DNA from: Mytilus trossulus
Lineage: Eukaryota
Length of the DNA: 64,000 nt
Reading direction: 5' to 3'
Assembly: GCF_036588685.1 (NCBI RefSeq)
Contig: NC_086375.1
Coordinates: forward strand, 44,702,001-44,766,000
Positions 19,701-28,700 of the stretch are shown here, piece after piece (within the stretch, counting starts at the first letter, position 1; each line of letters begins with the position of its first letter). The notes under the pieces are model-generated. The model was not told where the DNA came from and did no database searches. It saw only the letters and a program-made list of their open reading frames with translations. Both the position numbers and the translations under genes were made by a program.

Positions 19701-22700
19701 GGCTAACTGAGGTCAGTAAGAAAGCAAATTTTTTTAAAAACAATTAGTTATGAATAAGTGTTTGTTGCAATGTGATGACATCTTTCATTTATGTTGAAAG
19801 TATAAATTTCAAGATTTTTTAAATATTTCTAATGTTCATCAAGAGATTTGATCTAAAAAAAAACAGCTATTAACTTATAATTTAGAAACAATGCTTTAAA
19901 TGATGCATTTGGTAAAGTTCTTAATTTCCACTATACAAATGTTGAGCAATATAATTGTGTTTATTCATGCTATTTTTTTGGTGAAATGTTGAGCATATAA
20001 TTGACAGTAATCGATTACATACCAAAATTTGAGTAATCGATTATTAATCGATTGCACAAAAATCCTTCATGTACTCGATTAGTAATTGATTACATTTGTC
20101 AGTAATCGTGCCCATCCCTGGAAGACATATATCAACAAGAGAATGGTTTATTCATTGAGGTGAATGCACATAATGTCCAATTTTGTAACAAGGGCATTTA
20201 TTGAGATGTATTGTAGTTATGTATTTAGAAACTGATTTTGAAATACATAGTAAAAGTATGATACATGAGTGATTGCTTTCCAATTTGAATTAATTTGTTT
20301 ATTGTAGATTAAAACAAGAGGATAGTGGTGAGGATGATCAAACAGAACAGAAAAATGAACAAGAAGAAACAGATTCTCCATTCAAAGTTCGACCTTCACC
20401 AGTAAGTCTTTAAAAGATAGTTTATGAAGATTGGAATGTTACATTTTGAAAATTTGATAAAACTTATACATGTATTTAAAACAAGAGAGACAAATTGGAT
20501 TGTGGTCTCTTCTAAAAAACTTGTCCATCTATTTTTCTGAGCTTTTGCAACAAATGTATGGTGGATTGATCATAACTGAAGTTATTTCAAACAGATCTAA
20601 TTGAAACTTTTGCACAATGTTAATCTTCCTCAGATAATACCCTTAAACAATTGTTTGATTGGTGTTGTCTACCCATTATATAATTGTAGCGTTTTATAGG
20701 TAGGTAGCGATTTTTATTTTGTGATGAAGTTTTTAAATGTCCAATCAACATAAAACTTAGTAAACATGTATTTGTTCTCTTTCTAATTTTAATGCCAAAT
20801 TAGAGTTTTGACCCCAATTTGGCAGTCCACTTATCAAAGAAAATAATAGTGTGAGTGATACATGTATTTACAAGTTGTTTCAGAGTTCTAATTATGAAGT
20901 AAGTCAATTAAAATTTAACAAGCATTTCACAATTCAATCTTGCTTTATTTGATTAAGTTTCAGTATAATTTACTGAGGGGTCATCCATGATTGCGAACCA
21001 TTTTCAAAAGTGTACAAAACATACTTTTCCTGACCCACTTGTCATCAAAAAGTGTACATCAACAATTTTCAGATTTCAGGAAGAGAATCAATCATTCTTA
21101 TTAAAAAGAAGATCCTGTCTATTATAGTAAAGTTTAATACAAAAATTTGCATTGAAAATAAACTAAAACATATCTGACTGTTTTATTTTTATTTAAAAAA
21201 AAAAGTGTACGGTAAAAAGGTTGATTTTTTAACCCCCTCCCCCCAAGTCTACGTTTTGTACACTTTGAAAAATGGTTTACAATTATCGATGAACCCATAT
21301 TAGCTCACCTGGCCTAAAAGGCCAAGTTAGCTTTTCTCATCACTTTGCGTCCGTCGTCTGTCGTCCGTCGTCATTAACTTTTACAAAAATCTTCTCCTCT
21401 GAAACTACCGGGCCAAATTAATCCAAACTTGGCCACAATCATCATTGATGTATCTAGTTTAAAGATTGTGTTTTTAGCTCACCTGGCCCAAAGGGCCAAG
21501 TGAGCTTTTCTCATCACTTGGCGTCCGGCGTCCGTCGTCCGGCGTCCGTCGTCGTCCGGCGTTAGCTTTTACAAAAATCTTCTCCTCTGAAACTACTGGG
21601 CCAAATCAAACCAAACTTGGCCACAATCATCATTGGTGTATCTAGTTTAAAAAATGTGTGGCGTGACCCGGTCATCCAACCAAGATGGCCGCCACGGCTA
21701 AAAATAGAACATAGGGGTAAAATGCAGTTTTTGGCTTATAACTCAAAAACCAAAGCATTTAGAGGAAATCTGACATGGGGTTAAAATGTTTATCAGGTCA
21801 AGATCTATCTGCCCTGAAATTTTCAGATGAATCGGTTAACCTGTTGTTGGGTTGCTGCCCCTGAATTGGTAATTTTGAGGAAATTTTGCTGTTTTTGGTT
21901 ATTATTTTGAATATTATTATAGATAGAGATAAACTGTAAACAGTAATAATGTTCAGCAAAGTTAGATTTACAAATAAGTCAACATGACCGAAATGGTCAG
22001 TTGACCCCTTTAGGAGTTATTGCCCTTTATAGTCAATTTTTAACCATTTTTCATAACTCTAAGTAATCTTTTACAAAAATCTTCTCCTCTGAAACTACTG
22101 AGCCAAATTAATCCAAACTTGGCCACAATCATCTTTGGGGTATCTAGTTTAAAAAATGTGTGGCGTGACCCGGTCAACCAACCAAGATGGCCGCCACGGC
22201 TAAAATTAGAACATAGGGGTAAAATGCAGTTTTTGGCTTATAACTCAAAAACCAAAGCATTTTGAGGAAATTTGACATGGGATAAAAATGTTTATCAGGT
22301 CAATATCTATCTGCCCTGAAATTTTGAGATGAATTCAATTGGACAATCGGTTGTTGGCTTGCTGCCCTCCAATTGGTAATTTTTAAAGAAATTTTGCCGT
22401 TTTTGGTTATTATCTTGAATACTATTATAGATAGAGATAAACTGTAAACAGCAATAATGTTCAGCAAAGTAAGATCTACAAATAAGTCAACATGACCTAA
22501 ATGGTCAATTGACCCCTTAAGGAGTTATTGCCCTTTATAGTCAATTTTTAACAATTTTCATTAATTCGGTAAATTTATGTAAATTTTTACCAAATATTTT
22601 TCTCTGTTACTAATGGGCAAGGTTCATTATAGATATAATTGTAAGAAGCAAGAACGTTCAGTAAAGTAAGAACTTCAAACACATCACCATCACCAAAATA

Positions 22701-25700
22701 CAATTTTGTCATGAATCCATTTGTGTCCTTTGTTTAATATGCACATAGACCAAGGTGAGCGACACAGGCTCTTTAGAGCCTCTAGTTTGACATGGCCAAC
22801 CATCCAAGATGGCCGCCATGGCTAAAAATAGAACATAGGGGTAAAATGCAGTTTTTGGCTTATAACTCAAAAACCAAAGCATTTAGAGCAAATCTGACAT
22901 GGGGTAAAATTGTTAATCTGGTCAACATCTATCTGCCCTGAAATTTTCAGATGAATCAGACAACCCATTGTTGGGTTGCTGCCCCTAAATTGGGAATTTT
23001 AAGAAAATTTTACTGTTTTTGGTTATTATCTTGAATATTATTATAGATGGAGATAAACTGTAAACAGCAATAATGTTCAGCAAAGTAAGATTTACAAATA
23101 AGTCAACATGGCCAAAATGGTCAGTTGACCCCTTTAGGAGTACTTGCCCTCTATAGTCAATTTTTAACCATTTTTCGTAAATATCCATGATCTTTTTCTC
23201 CTCTGAGGTAGCAATACACAGTTAGGAAAAAAACTTAAAATTGACACTCATAATTTTTAAACACCCCCTTTCCCCTCCTGTCTAACAAAGAAGGCTTTAT
23301 ATGTGTGTTATGCATGTATATACTTGTAGAAAGAGAATCTTCCATAGATTTGATTTCTAATGGTCATAAGGGTGAAATATAATCCCTTTTGGGTGTAACC
23401 ATGGCAACAATCTGCATTTCTTAGATACAAAATATAGCAAAAAAGGGGGGTGAACATGTCACAAAAGTCTCCAAAATTTGGTCTAAAGGAAAATTTCAAT
23501 GAATTACAGTGATACCTTTCCTGAATCCATAGGTTTATATCTATCAAGTGGTCCAAAAAAAATCATATGTCTTCCTGCTCGTTTTTCCATAAAATTGAAT
23601 TGAAAAGATCGAGCGCAAAATCTTTGTTGATAAACACTACAATAATTTATGGACCTATGAACGGTACGGATAGGAAAATACGGACTGTCAATCATTGAAA
23701 TGGCCTATAAAACATGTTAAAATCAATCTAAATGTTCATTTAAACCCACTAAGAAGGCTATATTATTCTTCAATTACCTAAAAATCAATTTAATTGTACA
23801 AAAACTTTCATATTTAAAAAATTCACAGGGGCCATAATGCGAAACTAAACTTCTAACTGTGTATTGCTACCTTAAGGATTAACATTTTTTTTCCCAATTC
23901 CACTTTAAATAGATTTCTGTTTTCTACTAGTTAAAACGAGCATTTTCGCCTGCTAGTTTTGAAAATCGGTTCAGAAATAAATATTTTATGAAGGTTAGCA
24001 GTTGACACTGAAATGCAACAAAAAAGTGATTTTATGAAACATGCCATGTCAAAGTGCATTTTCTCCTTTTTTAGTCAATTTTCTAAAACTATACCTTCTA
24101 AGCCTGTCTTTCCTTGTTTAAAAACCTAACTTAACCTTTACAGTAGACAACTTTTACAAGTTAAAGCTATTTTAAAGCTCTAGAATGTCAATTTTGTTGT
24201 GTATTACCATACCAAGGCCTTGGTTAAAATTTAGTCAATACTGAATTTATTTATAACAGCGGGGAAAAAATTGGGCTTAATTCATGCTAAATTGTGACTT
24301 TATACTTGCTAAAATAATAAATTTGATTTAGTCGCATGAAAAAATATAAAGCGTTCCCTTCTAAGGTTTCTACATAACGCGCAATCTTCTTTTCCAAGGG
24401 GTAGCCAATAAAGTATCAATTAATAACGGAACCAAGTCTATGTGTCAAAATGTCTATATTGGTTGCTAAGGACAATAAACAACAAAACTAACATACATTG
24501 TCATACTAAAGGTTGTTTCTTCCTTAGAATTGTATCTATAACCTAAATATCAATAGTTTTGTGGTATGTTTGTCTGAAAAAAAGGCAATTATTTGCTTTG
24601 TCAAATGCCATAAGGTAGCAATACACAGTTAGGAAAAAAACTTAAAATTGACACTCATAATTTTTAAACACCCCCTTTCCCCTCCTGTCTAACAAAGAAG
24701 GCTTTATATGTGTGTTATGCATGTATATACTTGTAGAAAGAGAATCTTCCATAGATTTGATTTCTAATGGTCATAAGGGTGAAATATAATCCCTTTTGGG
24801 TGTAACCATGGCAACAATCTGCATTTCTTAGATACAAAATATAGCAAAAAAGGGGGGTGAACATGTCACAAAAGTCTCCAAAATTTGGTCTAAAGGAAAA
24901 TTTCAATGAATTACAGTGATACCTTTCCTGAATCCATAGGTTTATATCTATCAAGTGGTCCAAAAAAAAATCATATGTCTTCCTGCTCGTTTTTCCATAA
25001 AATTGAATTGAAAAGATCGAGCGCAAAATCTTTGTTGATAACCACTACAATAATTTATGGACCTATGAACGGTACGGATAGGAAAATACGGACTGTCAAT
25101 CATTGAAATGGCCTATAAAACATGTTAAAATCAATCTAAATGTTCATATAAACCCACTAAGAAGGCTATATTATTCTTCAATTACCTAAAAATCAATTTT
25201 ATTGTACAAAAACTTTCATATTTAAAAAATTCACAGGGGCCATAATACGAAACTAAACTTCTAACTGTGTATTGCTACCTGAAACTACCGGGCCAAATTA
25301 ATCCAAACTTGGCCACAATCATCATTGATGTATCTAGTTTAAAGTTTGTGTTTTTTTACCCGGCCAACCAACCAAGATGGCCGCCATGGCTCAAAATAGA
25401 ACATAGGGGTAAAATGCAGTTTTTGGCTTATAACTCAAAAACCAAAGCATTTAGAGCAAATCTGACATGGGGTAAAATTGTTAATCTGGTCAACATCTAT
25501 CTGCCCTGAAATTTTCAGATGAATCAGACAACCCATTGTTGGGTTGCTGCCCCTAAATTGGGAATTTTAAGAAAATTTTACTGTTTTTGGTTATTATCTT
25601 GAATATTATTATAGATGGAGATAAACTGTAAACAGCAATAATGTACAGCAATTTAAGACTCAAAAATAAGTCAAATGACCAAAATGGTCAATTGACCCCC

Positions 25701-28700
25701 TAAGAAGTAATTGTCCTCTATAATCAATTTTTAACAATTTTCATAAAACATTTTCCACTGAAACTACACGGACAAGTTCATTATAGATAGAGATAATTGT
25801 AAGCAGCAAGAATGTTCAGTAAAGTAAGATGTACAAACACATCACAATCACTTAACACAATTTTGTCATGAACTGTCTGCTTCCTTTGTTTAATTCACAT
25901 ATACCAAGGTGAGCGACACAGGCTCTTTTAGAGCCTCTAGTTATATTGTTAGATAAATAGATTGGACATTTATAATTTAAATTTGAATGGGAGACTGGTT
26001 AAATAAAATAACAGCACCATATCTATAAATGTTCAATTTTCTTTCAGAGACCAGGGCCTGGAGAACATCCATTACAGTTCAACTACGCAATATGGTTTTC
26101 ACGGAAATCTCAAGGAAAATCTTCTGCAAGTTATGATCAAAATTTAAAATTAGTGGGAACATTTGCATCGGTAAGATCACAACTTTACAACAGTGTAGCG
26201 CTATTATTTAATAATAAAGTTATCATAAAATTGAGAATGGAAATGGGGAATGTATCAAAGAGACAACAACCCGACAGTAGAAAAAAACAGCAGAAAGTCA
26301 CCAACAGGTCTTCAATGTAACAAGAAATTCCCGCACCTGGAAGCGTCCTTCAGCTGGCCCCTTAATAAATGTATACTAGTTCAGTGATAATGAACGCTAT
26401 ACTAATTTCCATTTGCGAGTATAGTCTTGAGGAAACGATGATAGTCCGTCGGAAGGGGACGATAAATGGCTGACCCGTGTTAAGAGAGAGCCATATCTCT
26501 TGAACGTTAAAGACACCCTTGTAGATTTCTAAAAAGAGTAGGCTAATGCCGCTACAAGGCAGCACTCGCACCTGCAAAGTGGAGAGGGATTAATATAAGT
26601 CGCAAAACTTGTTTCCCAATCCACTATAAATAAATATGTTTAAACTAATTAAACTAAACTAATTTCCAAATTGTACACAAGAAACTAAAATTAAAAAATA
26701 CAAGACTAACAAAGACCAGAGGCTCCTGACTTGGGACATGCGCTAAAATGTGGGGGGTTAAACATGTTTATGAGATCTCAATCCTCCCCTATACCTCTAG
26801 CCAATGTAGAAAAGTAAACACATAACAATACGTACATTTAAAATTCAATTCAAGAGAAGTCCGAGTCTGATGTCAGAAGATGTAACCAAAGAAAATAAAC
26901 AAAATGACAATTATACATAAATAACAACAGACTCCTAGCAGTTAACTGACATGCCAGCTCCAGACTTCAATTAAACTGATTGAAAGATTATGATTTCATC
27001 ATATGAATATCAGGCACAATCCTTCCCATTATGATTAGGGGTTTAGTAACATACCATCATAACATATATGAGAAGATCATAACCTGTGTCATGACAATCA
27101 GCATATATAATGTACAATGGTCATGAACAATAGAAACACTCTTAAAAAGTCATCACCAAGAATTACTTTTAAGTTTACCGTACATAGTCATAAACAATTA
27201 GGTTAATGAAAACCAAATTCTTAAGTTTTTGAGTATCTGATTTGAATAGGACTAATACAGTACATCATAAAGCATCATATAAGCAATAATTGAAAAGTGA
27301 TTCAGATACAATAATGATGATTTCATTAAAGTACTACAGTGTTTTAAAGCTTCAAGCTCTAAAGAAAATGAGCATATAAATATATTGTTTTAACCTTTTT
27401 GTCTCTGTCATTGTTTGTAGGTAGAACAGTTTTGGGGTATTTACAGTCATCTTGTCAGACCCAGTGATCTCACAGGTCATTGTGATTATCATCTTTTTAA
27501 AGAAGGAATAAGGCCAATGTGGGAGGTAAGAATTTATATAACCTGGTAATTTGAAAAAAGGTATGCTGACATTTTAAACAGTTTTAAAATTCTAGTAATA
27601 TTTAATATACATGTACTAGTTTAATTTTTTTTGATAGACATATACCTTTCTCATACAGCTAGAATTTGTCATCGATCATAGGTGATCTGTTTAGATTATT
27701 CAAATTTATATGCTGATTTTGGTGCTTATATAAAAACTGTGATAAATACGGTAGTGAAAAAAAAATGATTTTTGTAAATTTTCGACTAGTTTCAGGACCT
27801 GCAAATAGAGAAAACATGCAAGTACAAAATAAATTACCTTGATGTTTGTTTGCATGTAAAAAAATTTTGGTACTTGCATATACTGATTATACATTTATCC
27901 CACTCACAAATTTGTGTCAAAATACACGATTTTGTCCTGTTTTGTAGCAAAACCAGTTAAAATATTGGTGAATTTAATAAAAAAAAAAAAAAAAAATGAA
28001 AATTCATAAATCACCACACTTTGTAGTACTTTGTAGCAAAACCAGTTAAAATATTGGTGAATTAAAAAAAAAATGAAAATTCATAAATCACCATGTTTTG
28101 TAGTACTAACGTTTTTTTTAAGGCTGAAAAGCCCTTCTCATTTACATAGCTTATGTTTTGAAATCATAATTTTTTAGGATAGTGCAAATAATAAAGGTGG
28201 AAAATGGATTGTTCGATTAAAGAAAGGATTAGGATCCCGATGTTGGGAGAATTTAATTCTTGCCATGTTAGGAGAACAATTTATGGTTGGAGAAGAAATA
28301 TGTGGTGCAGTGATCTCAATTAGATATCAGGTAAATTATAATTGGAATATAGATAATTATAGAATATCTTTGGTCATCTTATAGAGATTGATTTTTTTGC
28401 GTGATCTGGTATGGTGAAAGTCATCTTCGCTAGCCAAGGGTTACGATCCACTCCCGCTATCTTCACCCTTGGCGGATTGAGTCAACATTTGTGATAACAG
28501 TGTTGCGCCATCTATCGGAAGATACAAATCACACCAATTCTAAATAAATTATTTTTGATCAATGGTAGCACTTGAACTCTTCAATTTGGAGGTAAAAACA
28601 CAGTAGCGTCTAGATTCTACACACTTGGTAAAGCCGGAAATGAAAACATAGGTCAACATTCATGCATTTGTGCATGAAATAAACACAGGAACTGCTATTT

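What the first reader, a model, noticed from the sequence alone, without database searches (positions are those of the whole stretch)
23204..25282. Apparent eukaryotic composite transposon: two MITEs mobilised together with 742 bp of cargo under one TSD
Seen: the host HINE core reads TTCTCCTC-TGA-AACTACCGGGCC uninterrupted elsewhere (~21392-21414), but here it is split as CTCCTC-TGA|2073 bp|TGA-AACTACCGGGCC. The insert is MITE(665) + unrelated 742 bp + MITE(666), in direct orientation and ~99% identical. Neither MITE has its own matching TSD: the inner flanks are TTA and TAA (typical Harbinger targets), while only the outer ends share TGA. Inference: a transposase used the two outermost TIRs and moved the intervening DNA, as in bacterial Tn5/Tn9/Tn10 or maize Ac macrotransposons. 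This could be a route for shuffling genomic segments and presence-absence variation in bivalves.
Basis: partly seen in the sequence, partly recalled or inferred. Interest (0 to 1): 0.8.

Follow-up and report, generated by a model that had tools for sequence, protein, structure and literature searches.

The report
Non-autonomous KolobokP transposon in mussel
The "two MITEs plus cargo" is one ordinary 2,073-bp copy of a published kind of bivalve DNA transposon (KolobokP) whose normal build is two long direct end-repeats around an internal piece, so it is not a chance capture of host DNA by Harbinger elements.

Summary
Two 665/666-bp TIR-bounded repeats (99.25% alike, direct orientation) flank 742 bp, with a single TGA duplication. 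An uninterrupted paralogous site lies 1.8 kb upstream.

The 742-bp "cargo" is not host DNA. It is a high-copy family component, always found next to the repeat or next to itself. The genome holds many such 2,073-bp units with other perfect 3-bp duplications, plus solo repeats and tandem multimers of 1,407-bp period up to about 41 kb.

This is the KolobokP architecture (LTDR-INT-LTDR) of Kojima & Bao 2022. Their KolobokP-N1_MyEd (2,070 bp, 663-bp LTDR, 3-bp TSD) is a diverged sister subfamily that is also present here.

A 4,996-bp element with the identical 19-nt TIR encodes a DDE transposase (PF20700) and an opposite-strand His-Me nuclease (PF05551). It does not encode a Harbinger enzyme.

One new point: the two end-repeats of a copy share copy-private variants, which implies homogenisation. 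The paper does not analyse this.

The scan had not noted this element before. Verdict: a new member of a known kind, of low interest.

The parts
23204..23206 (.). Left copy of the 3-bp target-site duplication (TGA)
   Evidence: The paralogous uninterrupted site has a single TGA.
23207..23871 (+). Left long terminal direct repeat (LTDR, 665 bp), ends GG...CC. Its own TIRs lie at 23207-23225 and 23853-23871.
   Evidence: About 60% identical overall to the 687-bp LTDR of the autonomous element L084, with identical TIRs and a conserved 3' subterminal stretch of about 55 bp. About 75% identical to the LTDR of the published N1_MyEd-type subfamily.
23872..24613 (+). Internal region (INT, 742 bp, non-coding), beginning TTAAGGAT and ending GCCATAA.
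   Evidence: at least 57 copies at 98-100% identity (nearly all 99%). In every fetched locus it is flanked by an LTDR or by another INT. It is 69% identical to the INT of the sister subfamily, and it shares the terminal motifs and a 13-nt block at the same offset with the autonomous INT.
24614..25279 (+). Right LTDR (666 bp). Its TIRs lie at 24614-24632 and 25261-25279.
   Evidence: It differs from the left LTDR at 5 positions, and all 5 are private to this copy.
25280..25282 (.). Right copy of the TSD (TGA)
21391..21414 (+). Paralogous uninterrupted ('empty') site in a neighbouring copy of the host repeat
   Evidence: TCTTCTCCTCTGAAACTACCGGGCC. It continues identical to the right flank of the insert.
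25758..25781 (+). Second, more diverged uninterrupted paralog of the target site in the next host-repeat unit
   Evidence: D10: CTGAAACTACACGGACAAGTTCAT, 79% identical to 25279-25302.

Best explanation
Window 23207-25279 is one monomer (LTDR-INT-LTDR, 2,073 bp) of a non-autonomous KolobokP DNA transposon of a Mytilus mussel. The composite look is the family's native, inherited architecture: a TIR-bounded 665-bp long terminal direct repeat, a 742-bp internal region, and a second LTDR.

Shown here:
- The unit lies in a host repeat with a 3-bp TSD (TGA).
- The same unit occurs at many loci with other perfect 3-bp TSDs.
- Solo LTDRs occur, as do (LTDR-INT)n-LTDR multimers and INT-INT junctions lacking 4 bp.

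Inferred:
- The transposase of that autonomous relative (KolobokP-3_MyEd type) cut at the two outermost TIRs and pasted the whole 2,073-bp unit into the TGA site.
- Multimers grow by unequal exchange between LTDRs.
- INT-INT junctions are footprints of excised LTDRs.
- The two LTDRs were identical at insertion and have since gained 5 private differences (0.75%), so the insertion is not brand new.
For: 1. Anatomy and TSD.

2. Multi-copy unit.
- 13 of 15 complete monomers have perfect 3-bp TSDs: TGA, TTT x2, TAA x5, TTA x3, TCA x2.
- A dimer has TTA/TTA. The C12 and C9 (about 41 kb) multimers have TAA/TAA and TTA/TTA. Solo LTDRs have TCA, TTA and AAA.

3. Genome counts: 2,231 exact TIR matches and 493 inner-junction matches.

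4. INT-INT period is 738 against 742, a 4-bp micro-deletion.

5. A diverged subfamily keeps the same 1,407-bp period and the same TTA/TAA inner ends.

6. Literature. Kojima & Bao 2022 (PMC9587614) define KolobokP by exactly these features:
- LTDR of about 450 or about 660 bp with its own TIRs, and RR..YY ends;
- TSD of 3-5 bp;
- solo LTDRs, multimers, and INT-INT junctions with a 3-4-bp deletion;
- richness in bivalves, including Mytilus.
Their Table S1 lists KolobokP-N1_MyEd (2,070 bp, LTDR 663, TSD 3, TIR 21) and KolobokP-3_MyEd (4,996 bp, LTDR 687, TIR 19). The printed N1_MyEd LTDR reads like locus L066 (compared by eye).

7. Autonomous partner.
- L084 (C13:55952124-55957119) is 4,996 bp with two identical 687-bp LTDRs, an INT of 3,622 bp and TSD TAA. 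Its 19-nt TIR is identical to the window's.
- Its 664-aa ORF scores 137 bits against PF20700. A 125-aa ORF on the opposite strand scores 41 bits against PF05551 zf-His_Me_endon.
Against: - The Kolobok assignment of the transposase was not tested independently. Pfam's best model is named 'Mutator-like transposase', so the assignment rests on the match in size, LTDR sequence and gene layout to the published KolobokP-3_MyEd.
- The comparison with the published N1_MyEd and 3_MyEd sequences was by eye, on machine-read supplement text.
- The window subfamily is only about 75% (LTDR) and 69% (INT) identical to the published N1_MyEd type, and its LTDR is about 60% identical to the autonomous LTDR. Cross-mobilisation is therefore inferred from identical TIRs and conserved subterminal and INT-end motifs. 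It is not shown.
- One-step insertion of the whole unit is not proven for this locus. The paper's alternative (an LTDR+INT circle recombining into a resident solo LTDR) leaves the same TSD.
- No reads span the locus.
- 2 of 15 monomers lack matching TSDs (L018, L033).
Confidence: 0.88

Rival explanations
1. Two independent PIF/Harbinger MITEs landed 742 bp apart at some locus. A Harbinger transposase then used the outermost TIRs and carried the intervening host DNA here, as an opportunistic composite or macrotransposon.
For: - There is a single outer 3-bp TSD, and the inner flanks are TTA/TAA.
- TSDs are mostly TAA/TTA genome-wide.
- Harbinger DDE genes are abundant in this genome, with 886 candidates.
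Against: - The 742 bp is a family component in all fetched copies and is never found in host context.
- The same architecture and inner ends are kept in a subfamily about 25-30% diverged and in the autonomous element.
- The TIR-sharing autonomous element encodes PF20700 plus PF05551, not DDE_Tnp_4.
- The left and right repeats have no fixed differences and share copy-private variants. Two independently inserted MITEs moved by plain cut-and-paste would not show this.
Confidence: 0.03
2. The unit is a small LTR-type retroelement (TRIM- or LARD-like): the 665-bp repeats are LTRs and the 742 bp is the internal domain. That would explain identical end-repeats at insertion, solo repeats and tandem LTR-internal arrays.
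For: - The left and right repeats share copy-private variants, and 5 of the first 11 elements have left identical to right.
- Solo repeats and repeat-internal arrays exist.
Against: - The ends are GG...CC with 19-20-nt perfect TIRs, not TG...CA.
- The TSD is 3 bp, not 4-6 bp.
- The internal region starts TTAAGGATTAAC (no TGG-type primer-binding site) and ends ...TGTCAAATGCCATAA (no polypurine tract).
- INT-INT junctions exist.
- The TIR-sharing autonomous element encodes a DDE transposase and a nuclease, with no reverse transcriptase.
Confidence: 0.02
3. Same family, different route for this locus. A solo LTDR first transposed into the TGA site. An extrachromosomal LTDR+INT circle of 1,407 bp (or nuclease-induced repair from another copy) then recombined into it and rebuilt LTDR-INT-LTDR. 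This is model 5b1 of Kojima & Bao. On this route the 2,073 bp never moved as one piece.
For: - Solo LTDRs with their own 3-bp TSDs exist and share lineage variants with multimers.
- The route leaves the TSD unchanged (PMC9587614).
- The two LTDRs evolve in concert.
Against: - A single crossover between a resident LTDR and a circle LTDR of different lineages should leave patterned one-sided variants. In the sampled monomers, one-sided variants are mostly copy-private and unpatterned.
- Monomers with perfect TSDs are as common as solo LTDRs among the young copies fetched.
- No circles were observed, and none could be looked for with the tools at hand.
Confidence: 0.07

Closest known systems
KolobokP-N1_MyEd, a non-autonomous KolobokP family of Mytilus edulis (Kojima & Bao 2022, Mob DNA 13:24; Table S1 and Data S1)
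   Same: - Architecture is LTDR-INT-LTDR.
- Total length is 2,070 against 2,073 bp, and LTDR length is 663 against 665/666 bp.
- Both have a 3-bp TSD.
- TIR is about 20 nt, beginning GGTAGCAATA.
- Both are high-copy.
- Inner ends are the same (...GCTACC|TTA... and ...GCCATAA|GGTAGC).
- This type is itself present in the genome as 1,407-bp-period arrays (L066, L067).
   Different: The window copy belongs to a sister subfamily, about 75% (LTDR) and 69% (INT) identical to it. By the usual 80% rule that makes it a separate family, and it is not listed in the paper's Table S1 for Mytilus.
KolobokP-3_MyEd, an autonomous KolobokP (4,996 bp, 687-bp LTDRs, 19-nt TIR)
   Same: - The 19-nt TIR is identical.
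- The 3' subterminal LTDR stretch is conserved.
- INT termini are the same (TTAAGGAT...CCATAA).
- Copies at C13:55952124 and C7:37918416 of this genome have a 3-bp TAA TSD.
   Different: - Its INT is 3.6 kb and encodes a transposase and a His-Me nuclease. The window's INT is 742 bp and non-coding.
- The LTDRs are only about 60% identical overall.
Bacterial composite transposons (Tn5, Tn9, Tn10) and maize Ac/Ds macrotransposons
   Same: Two TIR-bounded units in one molecule. The outermost ends define the mobile unit, which has a single TSD. Each flanking unit can also move or be excised alone.
   Different: - Those are opportunistic. Independent elements that encode or borrow a transposase bracket unrelated cargo.
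- Here the flanking units are non-coding, and the 'cargo' is the family's own internal region, which is the coding part in autonomous members.
- The layout is inherited across subfamilies and phyla.
TRIM / LTR retrotransposons
   Same: Long direct end-repeats, solo repeats, tandem repeat-internal multimers, and end-repeats of one copy that look alike.
   Different: It is a DNA transposon. It has 20-nt TIRs, GG..CC ends and a 3-bp TSD, it lacks a PBS and a PPT, and its partner encodes a DDE transposase.

Membership tests
KolobokP (Kojima & Bao 2022) | Composite-like LTDR-INT-LTDR architecture | tested here: met
   665 + 742 + 666 bp in direct orientation. The same unit is found at 15 or more loci.
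KolobokP (Kojima & Bao 2022) | Each LTDR carries its own short TIRs (11-21 nt) and ends 5'-RR...YY-3' | tested here: met
   perfect 19-20-nt TIRs, with ends GG...CC.
KolobokP (Kojima & Bao 2022) | LTDR length about 450 bp or about 660 bp | tested here: met
   665 and 666 bp. The sister subfamily has 663 bp.
KolobokP (Kojima & Bao 2022) | TSD of 3-5 bp with weak target preference | tested here: met
   Perfect 3-bp TSDs in 13 of 15 monomers, in solo LTDRs and in multimers. TAA and TTA are commonest, and TGA, TCA, TTT and AAA also occur.
KolobokP (Kojima & Bao 2022) | Solo LTDRs, (LTDR-INT)n-LTDR multimers, and abutted INT-INT with a 3-4-bp micro-deletion | tested here: met
   Arrays have a 1,407-bp period and reach about 41 kb. 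INT-INT spacing is 738 against 742 bp. Solo LTDRs are L032, L062 and L063.
KolobokP (Kojima & Bao 2022) | [quoted passage not shown] | tested here: met
   L084 has an identical TIR. Its 664-aa plus-strand ORF scores 137 bits against PF20700 (E 9e-40). Its 125-aa minus-strand ORF scores 41 bits against PF05551.
KolobokP (Kojima & Bao 2022) | The transposase falls inside the Kolobok superfamily by phylogeny | tested here: inconclusive
   No phylogeny was run. Pfam's model is named 'Mutator-like'. The ORF shows a CxxH motif (CFIH), a Cys/His cluster and a ...SESLHH motif in the order the paper describes. Dimensions equal the published KolobokP-3_MyEd.
PIF/Harbinger MITE (Tourist-like) | 3-bp TSD, typically TWA | tested here: inconclusive
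   The length of 3 bp fits, and TAA/TTA are commonest. TGA, TCA, TTT and AAA also occur. The feature does not discriminate against KolobokP.
PIF/Harbinger MITE (Tourist-like) | The TIR-sharing autonomous element encodes a DDE_Tnp_4 (PF13359) transposase and a Myb/SANT partner | tested here: not met
   The TIR-sharing element encodes PF20700 and PF05551. None of the PF13359 loci could be tied to this TIR.
Opportunistic composite / macrotransposon (Tn10-like, Ac macrotransposon) | The intervening segment is unrelated host or cargo DNA captured between two independently inserted elements | tested here: not met
   The segment is a conserved family part, kept in a diverged subfamily and homologous at its ends to the autonomous INT. 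There is no host-context copy among the fetched loci.
LTR retrotransposon / TRIM | TG...CA ends, 4-6-bp TSD, a PBS after the 5' LTR and a PPT before the 3' LTR | tested here: not met
   Direct reading shows GG...CC ends, a 3-bp TSD, an internal region that starts TTAAGGATTAAC, and an end ...AAATGCCATAA that is not purine-rich.

The most novel reading that the evidence does not exclude
The two LTDRs of a KolobokP copy are not passively carried along. They are made alike at, or just before, each new insertion. Candidate routes are copying from a one-LTDR template such as a 1,407-bp LTDR+INT circle, passage through homogenised multimers, or gene conversion induced by the His-Me nuclease.

Evidence:
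- In 16 complete elements, 59 deviations from the consensus sit on both LTDRs of the same copy and 61 on one.
- The left and right consensus sequences are identical.
- Several copies have left identical to right while carrying 1-17 lineage-specific variants.
- Multimers carry array-wide private variants.

The 2022 paper leaves open how the composite layout is maintained, and it does not analyse left/right identity. If a single-template step exists, this DNA transposon would regenerate its end-repeats as LTR retrotransposons do, but without RNA.
Probability: 0.3. Interest if true: 0.55.

Novelty: new member of a known kind. Interest (0 to 1): 0.2.

Why it matters
As filed, the finding would have been a rare eukaryotic case of opportunistic composite transposition moving host DNA. 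It is not. It is a routine copy of a published bivalve transposon lineage whose built-in layout mimics a composite.

The practical value is in annotation:
- Such units should not be read as MITE pairs with cargo, as Harbinger elements, or as LTR elements.
- The 1,407-bp arrays are KolobokP multimers, not an independent satellite.

The one point of wider interest is the concerted evolution of the two end-repeats. It bears on the unresolved KolobokP mechanism (circle intermediate, nuclease-induced conversion, or unequal exchange), and this genome offers hundreds of young copies with which to test it.

Tried and rejected
1. Harbinger partner. PF13359 gave 886 candidates, 150 of them scored. None could be linked to the TIR, and the idea was dropped once the TIR-sharing KolobokP-3-type element was found.
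2. TIR singletons on contig C1. All were ends of the two LTDR subfamilies except L071/L083. That locus proved to be a messy nest: an inverted LTDR copy plus LINE reverse-transcriptase fragments between two TIRs. It is uninformative.
3. Direct LTDR-NNN-LTDR tandems: none in the genome.
4. TA-TSD (Tc1/mariner-like) reading, with ends taken as AGG...CCT. It fits the inner junctions but fails at the outer ends in all copies, so it was rejected.
5. The INT-INT junction as an original satellite junction into which a MITE had inserted. It needs an extra base. It is better explained as an LTDR-excision footprint with a 4-bp loss, as in the paper.
6. Reads. Only Logan contigs of about 80-370 nt were available, so there was no spanning read, no empty allele and no usable joint at 23206/25280.
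7. The search of earlier findings by place, sequence and words held nothing on this element.
9. The published consensus sequences were not typed into any alignment tool. They were compared by eye only. One 29-nt search pattern joined the window's 19-nt TIR to 10 nt read from the paper's supplement.
Full report
**1. Observation**

- A 665-bp repeat (23207-23871) and a 666-bp repeat (24614-25279) lie in direct orientation around 742 bp (23872-24613).
- Each repeat is bounded by a perfect 19-20-nt inverted repeat, GGTAGCAATACACAGTTAG. The window holds 4 exact hits against 0.02 expected by shuffling.
- TGA precedes and follows the whole 2,073 bp.
- The host repeat reads ...TTCTCCTCTGAAACTACCGGGCC... 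with one TGA at 21391-21414. A more diverged paralog lies at 25758-25781.
- The two repeats differ at 5 positions.
- The inner flanks are TTA and TAA.

**2. The 'cargo' is not cargo**

A search of the window's own genome with the 742 bp returned at least 57 matches at 98-100% identity (nearly all 99%), out of 1,046 candidates.
- In all fetched loci the 742 bp is flanked by the 665-bp repeat or by another copy of itself.
- The repeat itself has 2,431 candidates.
- The exact 19-mer TIR occurs 2,231 times, and the inner junction CCWTAAGGTAGC... occurs 493 times.

Three forms recur:
- solo repeats;
- repeat-middle-repeat units of about 2,073 bp;
- tandem arrays of 1,407-bp period, up to about 41 kb on contig C9, with occasional middle-middle junctions of 738-bp period.

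The ends carry 3-bp duplications.
- 13 of 15 complete monomers have perfect TSDs: TGA, TTT x2, TAA x5, TTA x3, TCA x2.
- A dimer has TTA/TTA, and two multimers have TAA/TAA and TTA/TTA.
- Solo repeats have TCA, TTA and AAA.
- Two monomers have unmatched flanks (L018, L033).

So is its refutation clause (the cargo is part of a longer family consensus).

**3. The layout is old**

Arrays on C1 (L066, L067) belong to a subfamily whose repeat is about 75% identical and whose middle piece is 69% identical to the window's. They keep the same 1,407-bp period and the same inner ends...GCTACC|TTA... and ...GCCATAA|GGTAGC.... A chance composite would not be conserved in this way.

**4. Identification**

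A literature search led to Kojima & Bao 2022, Mobile DNA 13:24 (PMC9587614). They define KolobokP by these features:
- LTDRs that carry their own short TIRs and end RR...YY;
- LTDR length of either about 450 or about 660 bp;
- TSD of 3-5 bp;
- plentiful solo LTDRs and (LTDR-INT)n-LTDR multimers;
- abutted INTs that almost always lack 3-4 bp;
- richness in bivalves, including Mytilus.

Every one of these features is met here (see the membership table). Their Table S1 lists two relevant Mytilus edulis families:
- KolobokP-N1_MyEd: 2,070 bp, LTDR 663, TSD 3, TIR 21, high copy.
- KolobokP-3_MyEd: 4,996 bp, LTDR 687, TIR 19.

The printed N1_MyEd LTDR reads, allowing for machine-reading errors, like the LTDR in L066. 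That comparison was by eye, because I did not type published sequence into alignment tools. The window copy is thus a sister subfamily of a published family.

**5. The autonomous partner is not Harbinger**

I searched with the window's 19-nt TIR extended by 10 nt read from the supplement's KolobokP-3_MyEd LTDR. This gave 8 genomic hits, including two pairs about 4.3 kb apart.

The copy on C13 (L084, C13:55952124-55957119):
- It is 4,996 bp, with two identical 687-bp LTDRs, a 3,622-bp INT and TSD TAA.
- It has a 664-aa plus-strand ORF (PF20700, 137 bits, E 9e-40).
- It has a 125-aa minus-strand ORF just downstream (PF05551, His-Me/His-Cys homing-endonuclease zinc loop, 41 bits).
- This is the gene layout the paper gives for KolobokP.
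- Its INT begins TTAAGGAT and ends CCATAA, like the window's 742 bp. The two also share a 13-nt block at the same offset.
- Its LTDR shares the TIRs and about 55 nt of 3' subterminal sequence with the window's LTDR.

The copy on C7 (L085) has identical LTDRs but an 8-bp deletion inside the transposase ORF.

Pfam names PF20700 'Mutator-like'. I did not run a phylogeny, so the Kolobok superfamily assignment rests on the published family.

**6. Mechanism**

What is shown is one TSD around the whole unit here and at many other loci.

What is inferred is that the transposase of the KolobokP-3-type element cuts at the outermost TIRs and pastes the unit in.
- The INT-INT junctions (GCCATAAGGATT, 4 bp short) fit LTDR excision followed by joining at the shared TAA. 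The paper proposes the same.
- Multimers fit unequal exchange between LTDRs. Each array carries variants present in all its units.

**7. A point the paper does not treat**

- The left and right LTDR consensus sequences are identical.
- In 16 complete elements, 59 deviations from consensus are on both LTDRs of the same copy and 61 on one.
- Five young monomers and a dimer have left identical to right while carrying 1-4 private variants.
- L090, about 3% from consensus, has 17 two-sided variants and 2 one-sided.
- A solo LTDR (C1:9693387) shares three lineage variants with the C26 multimer.
- The window copy has 0 two-sided and 5 one-sided variants, all private. This points to identical LTDRs at insertion and later decay of 0.75%.

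Plain cut-and-paste of a composite would not make lineage variants two-sided, so some homogenising step exists. It could be passage through multimers, nuclease-induced conversion, or a one-LTDR circular template. The data do not choose among these. A few one-sided variants are shared by different loci (for example alignment column 575 T on the left LTDR of three copies), so intact carry-over may also occur.

**8. Reads**

All public runs offered were Logan contigs of about 80-370 nt. They show that both the LTDR and the INT are high-copy in runs of three coded organisms. They cannot span the locus or show an empty allele.

**9. Verdict**

The reading as a composite unit under one TSD is right in form. 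The reading as two Harbinger MITEs capturing host DNA is wrong. The element is a new member (sister subfamily) of a known and little-studied kind. Interest is low, apart from the LTDR homogenisation signal.

Noticed in passing
L084 = G000:C13:55952124-55957119; L085 = G000:C7:37918416-37923407: Two copies of an autonomous KolobokP-3_MyEd-type element. All four 687-bp LTDRs are identical, and both copies have TSD TAA. The C13 copy has an open 664-aa transposase ORF and a 125-aa His-Me nuclease ORF. The C7 copy has an 8-bp deletion inside the transposase ORF, and the two INTs also differ by a 4-bp indel and 6 substitutions.
   Followed up: partly
G000:C9:5323579-5366183 (loci L039-L054): A KolobokP multimer of about 41 kb (1,407-bp period) with matching TTA at both outer ends. 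One variant (95C) is present in all 23 sampled LTDR units. A few units have internal deletions or INT-INT junctions.
   Followed up: partly
L066 (G000:C1:22441100-22444100), L067 (G000:C1:26837000-26840000): Long arrays of the published N1_MyEd-type subfamily in which the 5' TIR of every unit carries the same change (GGTAGCAATAAACAG). The arrays therefore spread by amplification, not by TIR-dependent transposition of single units.
   Followed up: partly
L063 (G000:C1:9693387-9694051) and G000:C26:2943756-2957152: A solo LTDR with TSD AAA shares three lineage variants (259G, 385C, 386C) with all nine sampled units of the C26 multimer. It either came from that lineage by solo-LTDR transposition or shares its source.
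   Followed up: partly
window 22500-23203 and 25283-25950: The host of the insertion is itself a tandemly arranged repeat of about 495-bp period (22786-23085 is 97% identical to 25354-25653). In the laid contigs its summed depth is about ten-fold that of the KolobokP parts. Its identity as a 'HINE' was not tested.
   Followed up: no
L083 (G000:C1:15671950-15675398): A 3.4-kb stretch between two of these TIRs holds an inverted, 87%-identical LTDR copy and LINE-type reverse-transcriptase ORF fragments. It is a nested or rearranged locus, not a separate family member.
   Followed up: partly
L018 (G000:C3:1844457-1846528), L033 (G000:C4:50328958-50331029): Two otherwise complete monomers lack matching TSDs (TCG/TAT and CAT/TTT). 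In both, the flanks contain short repeated host motifs. Possible causes are recombination between copies or flank loss on excision and reinsertion.
   Followed up: no
G000:C12:6631256 and 6642814; C11:62060628; C6:64495111: Further hits to the KolobokP-3-type LTDR start, including a pair 11.5 kb apart on C12. That spacing is longer than one element, so there may be nested insertions or a multimer with extra DNA.
   Followed up: no
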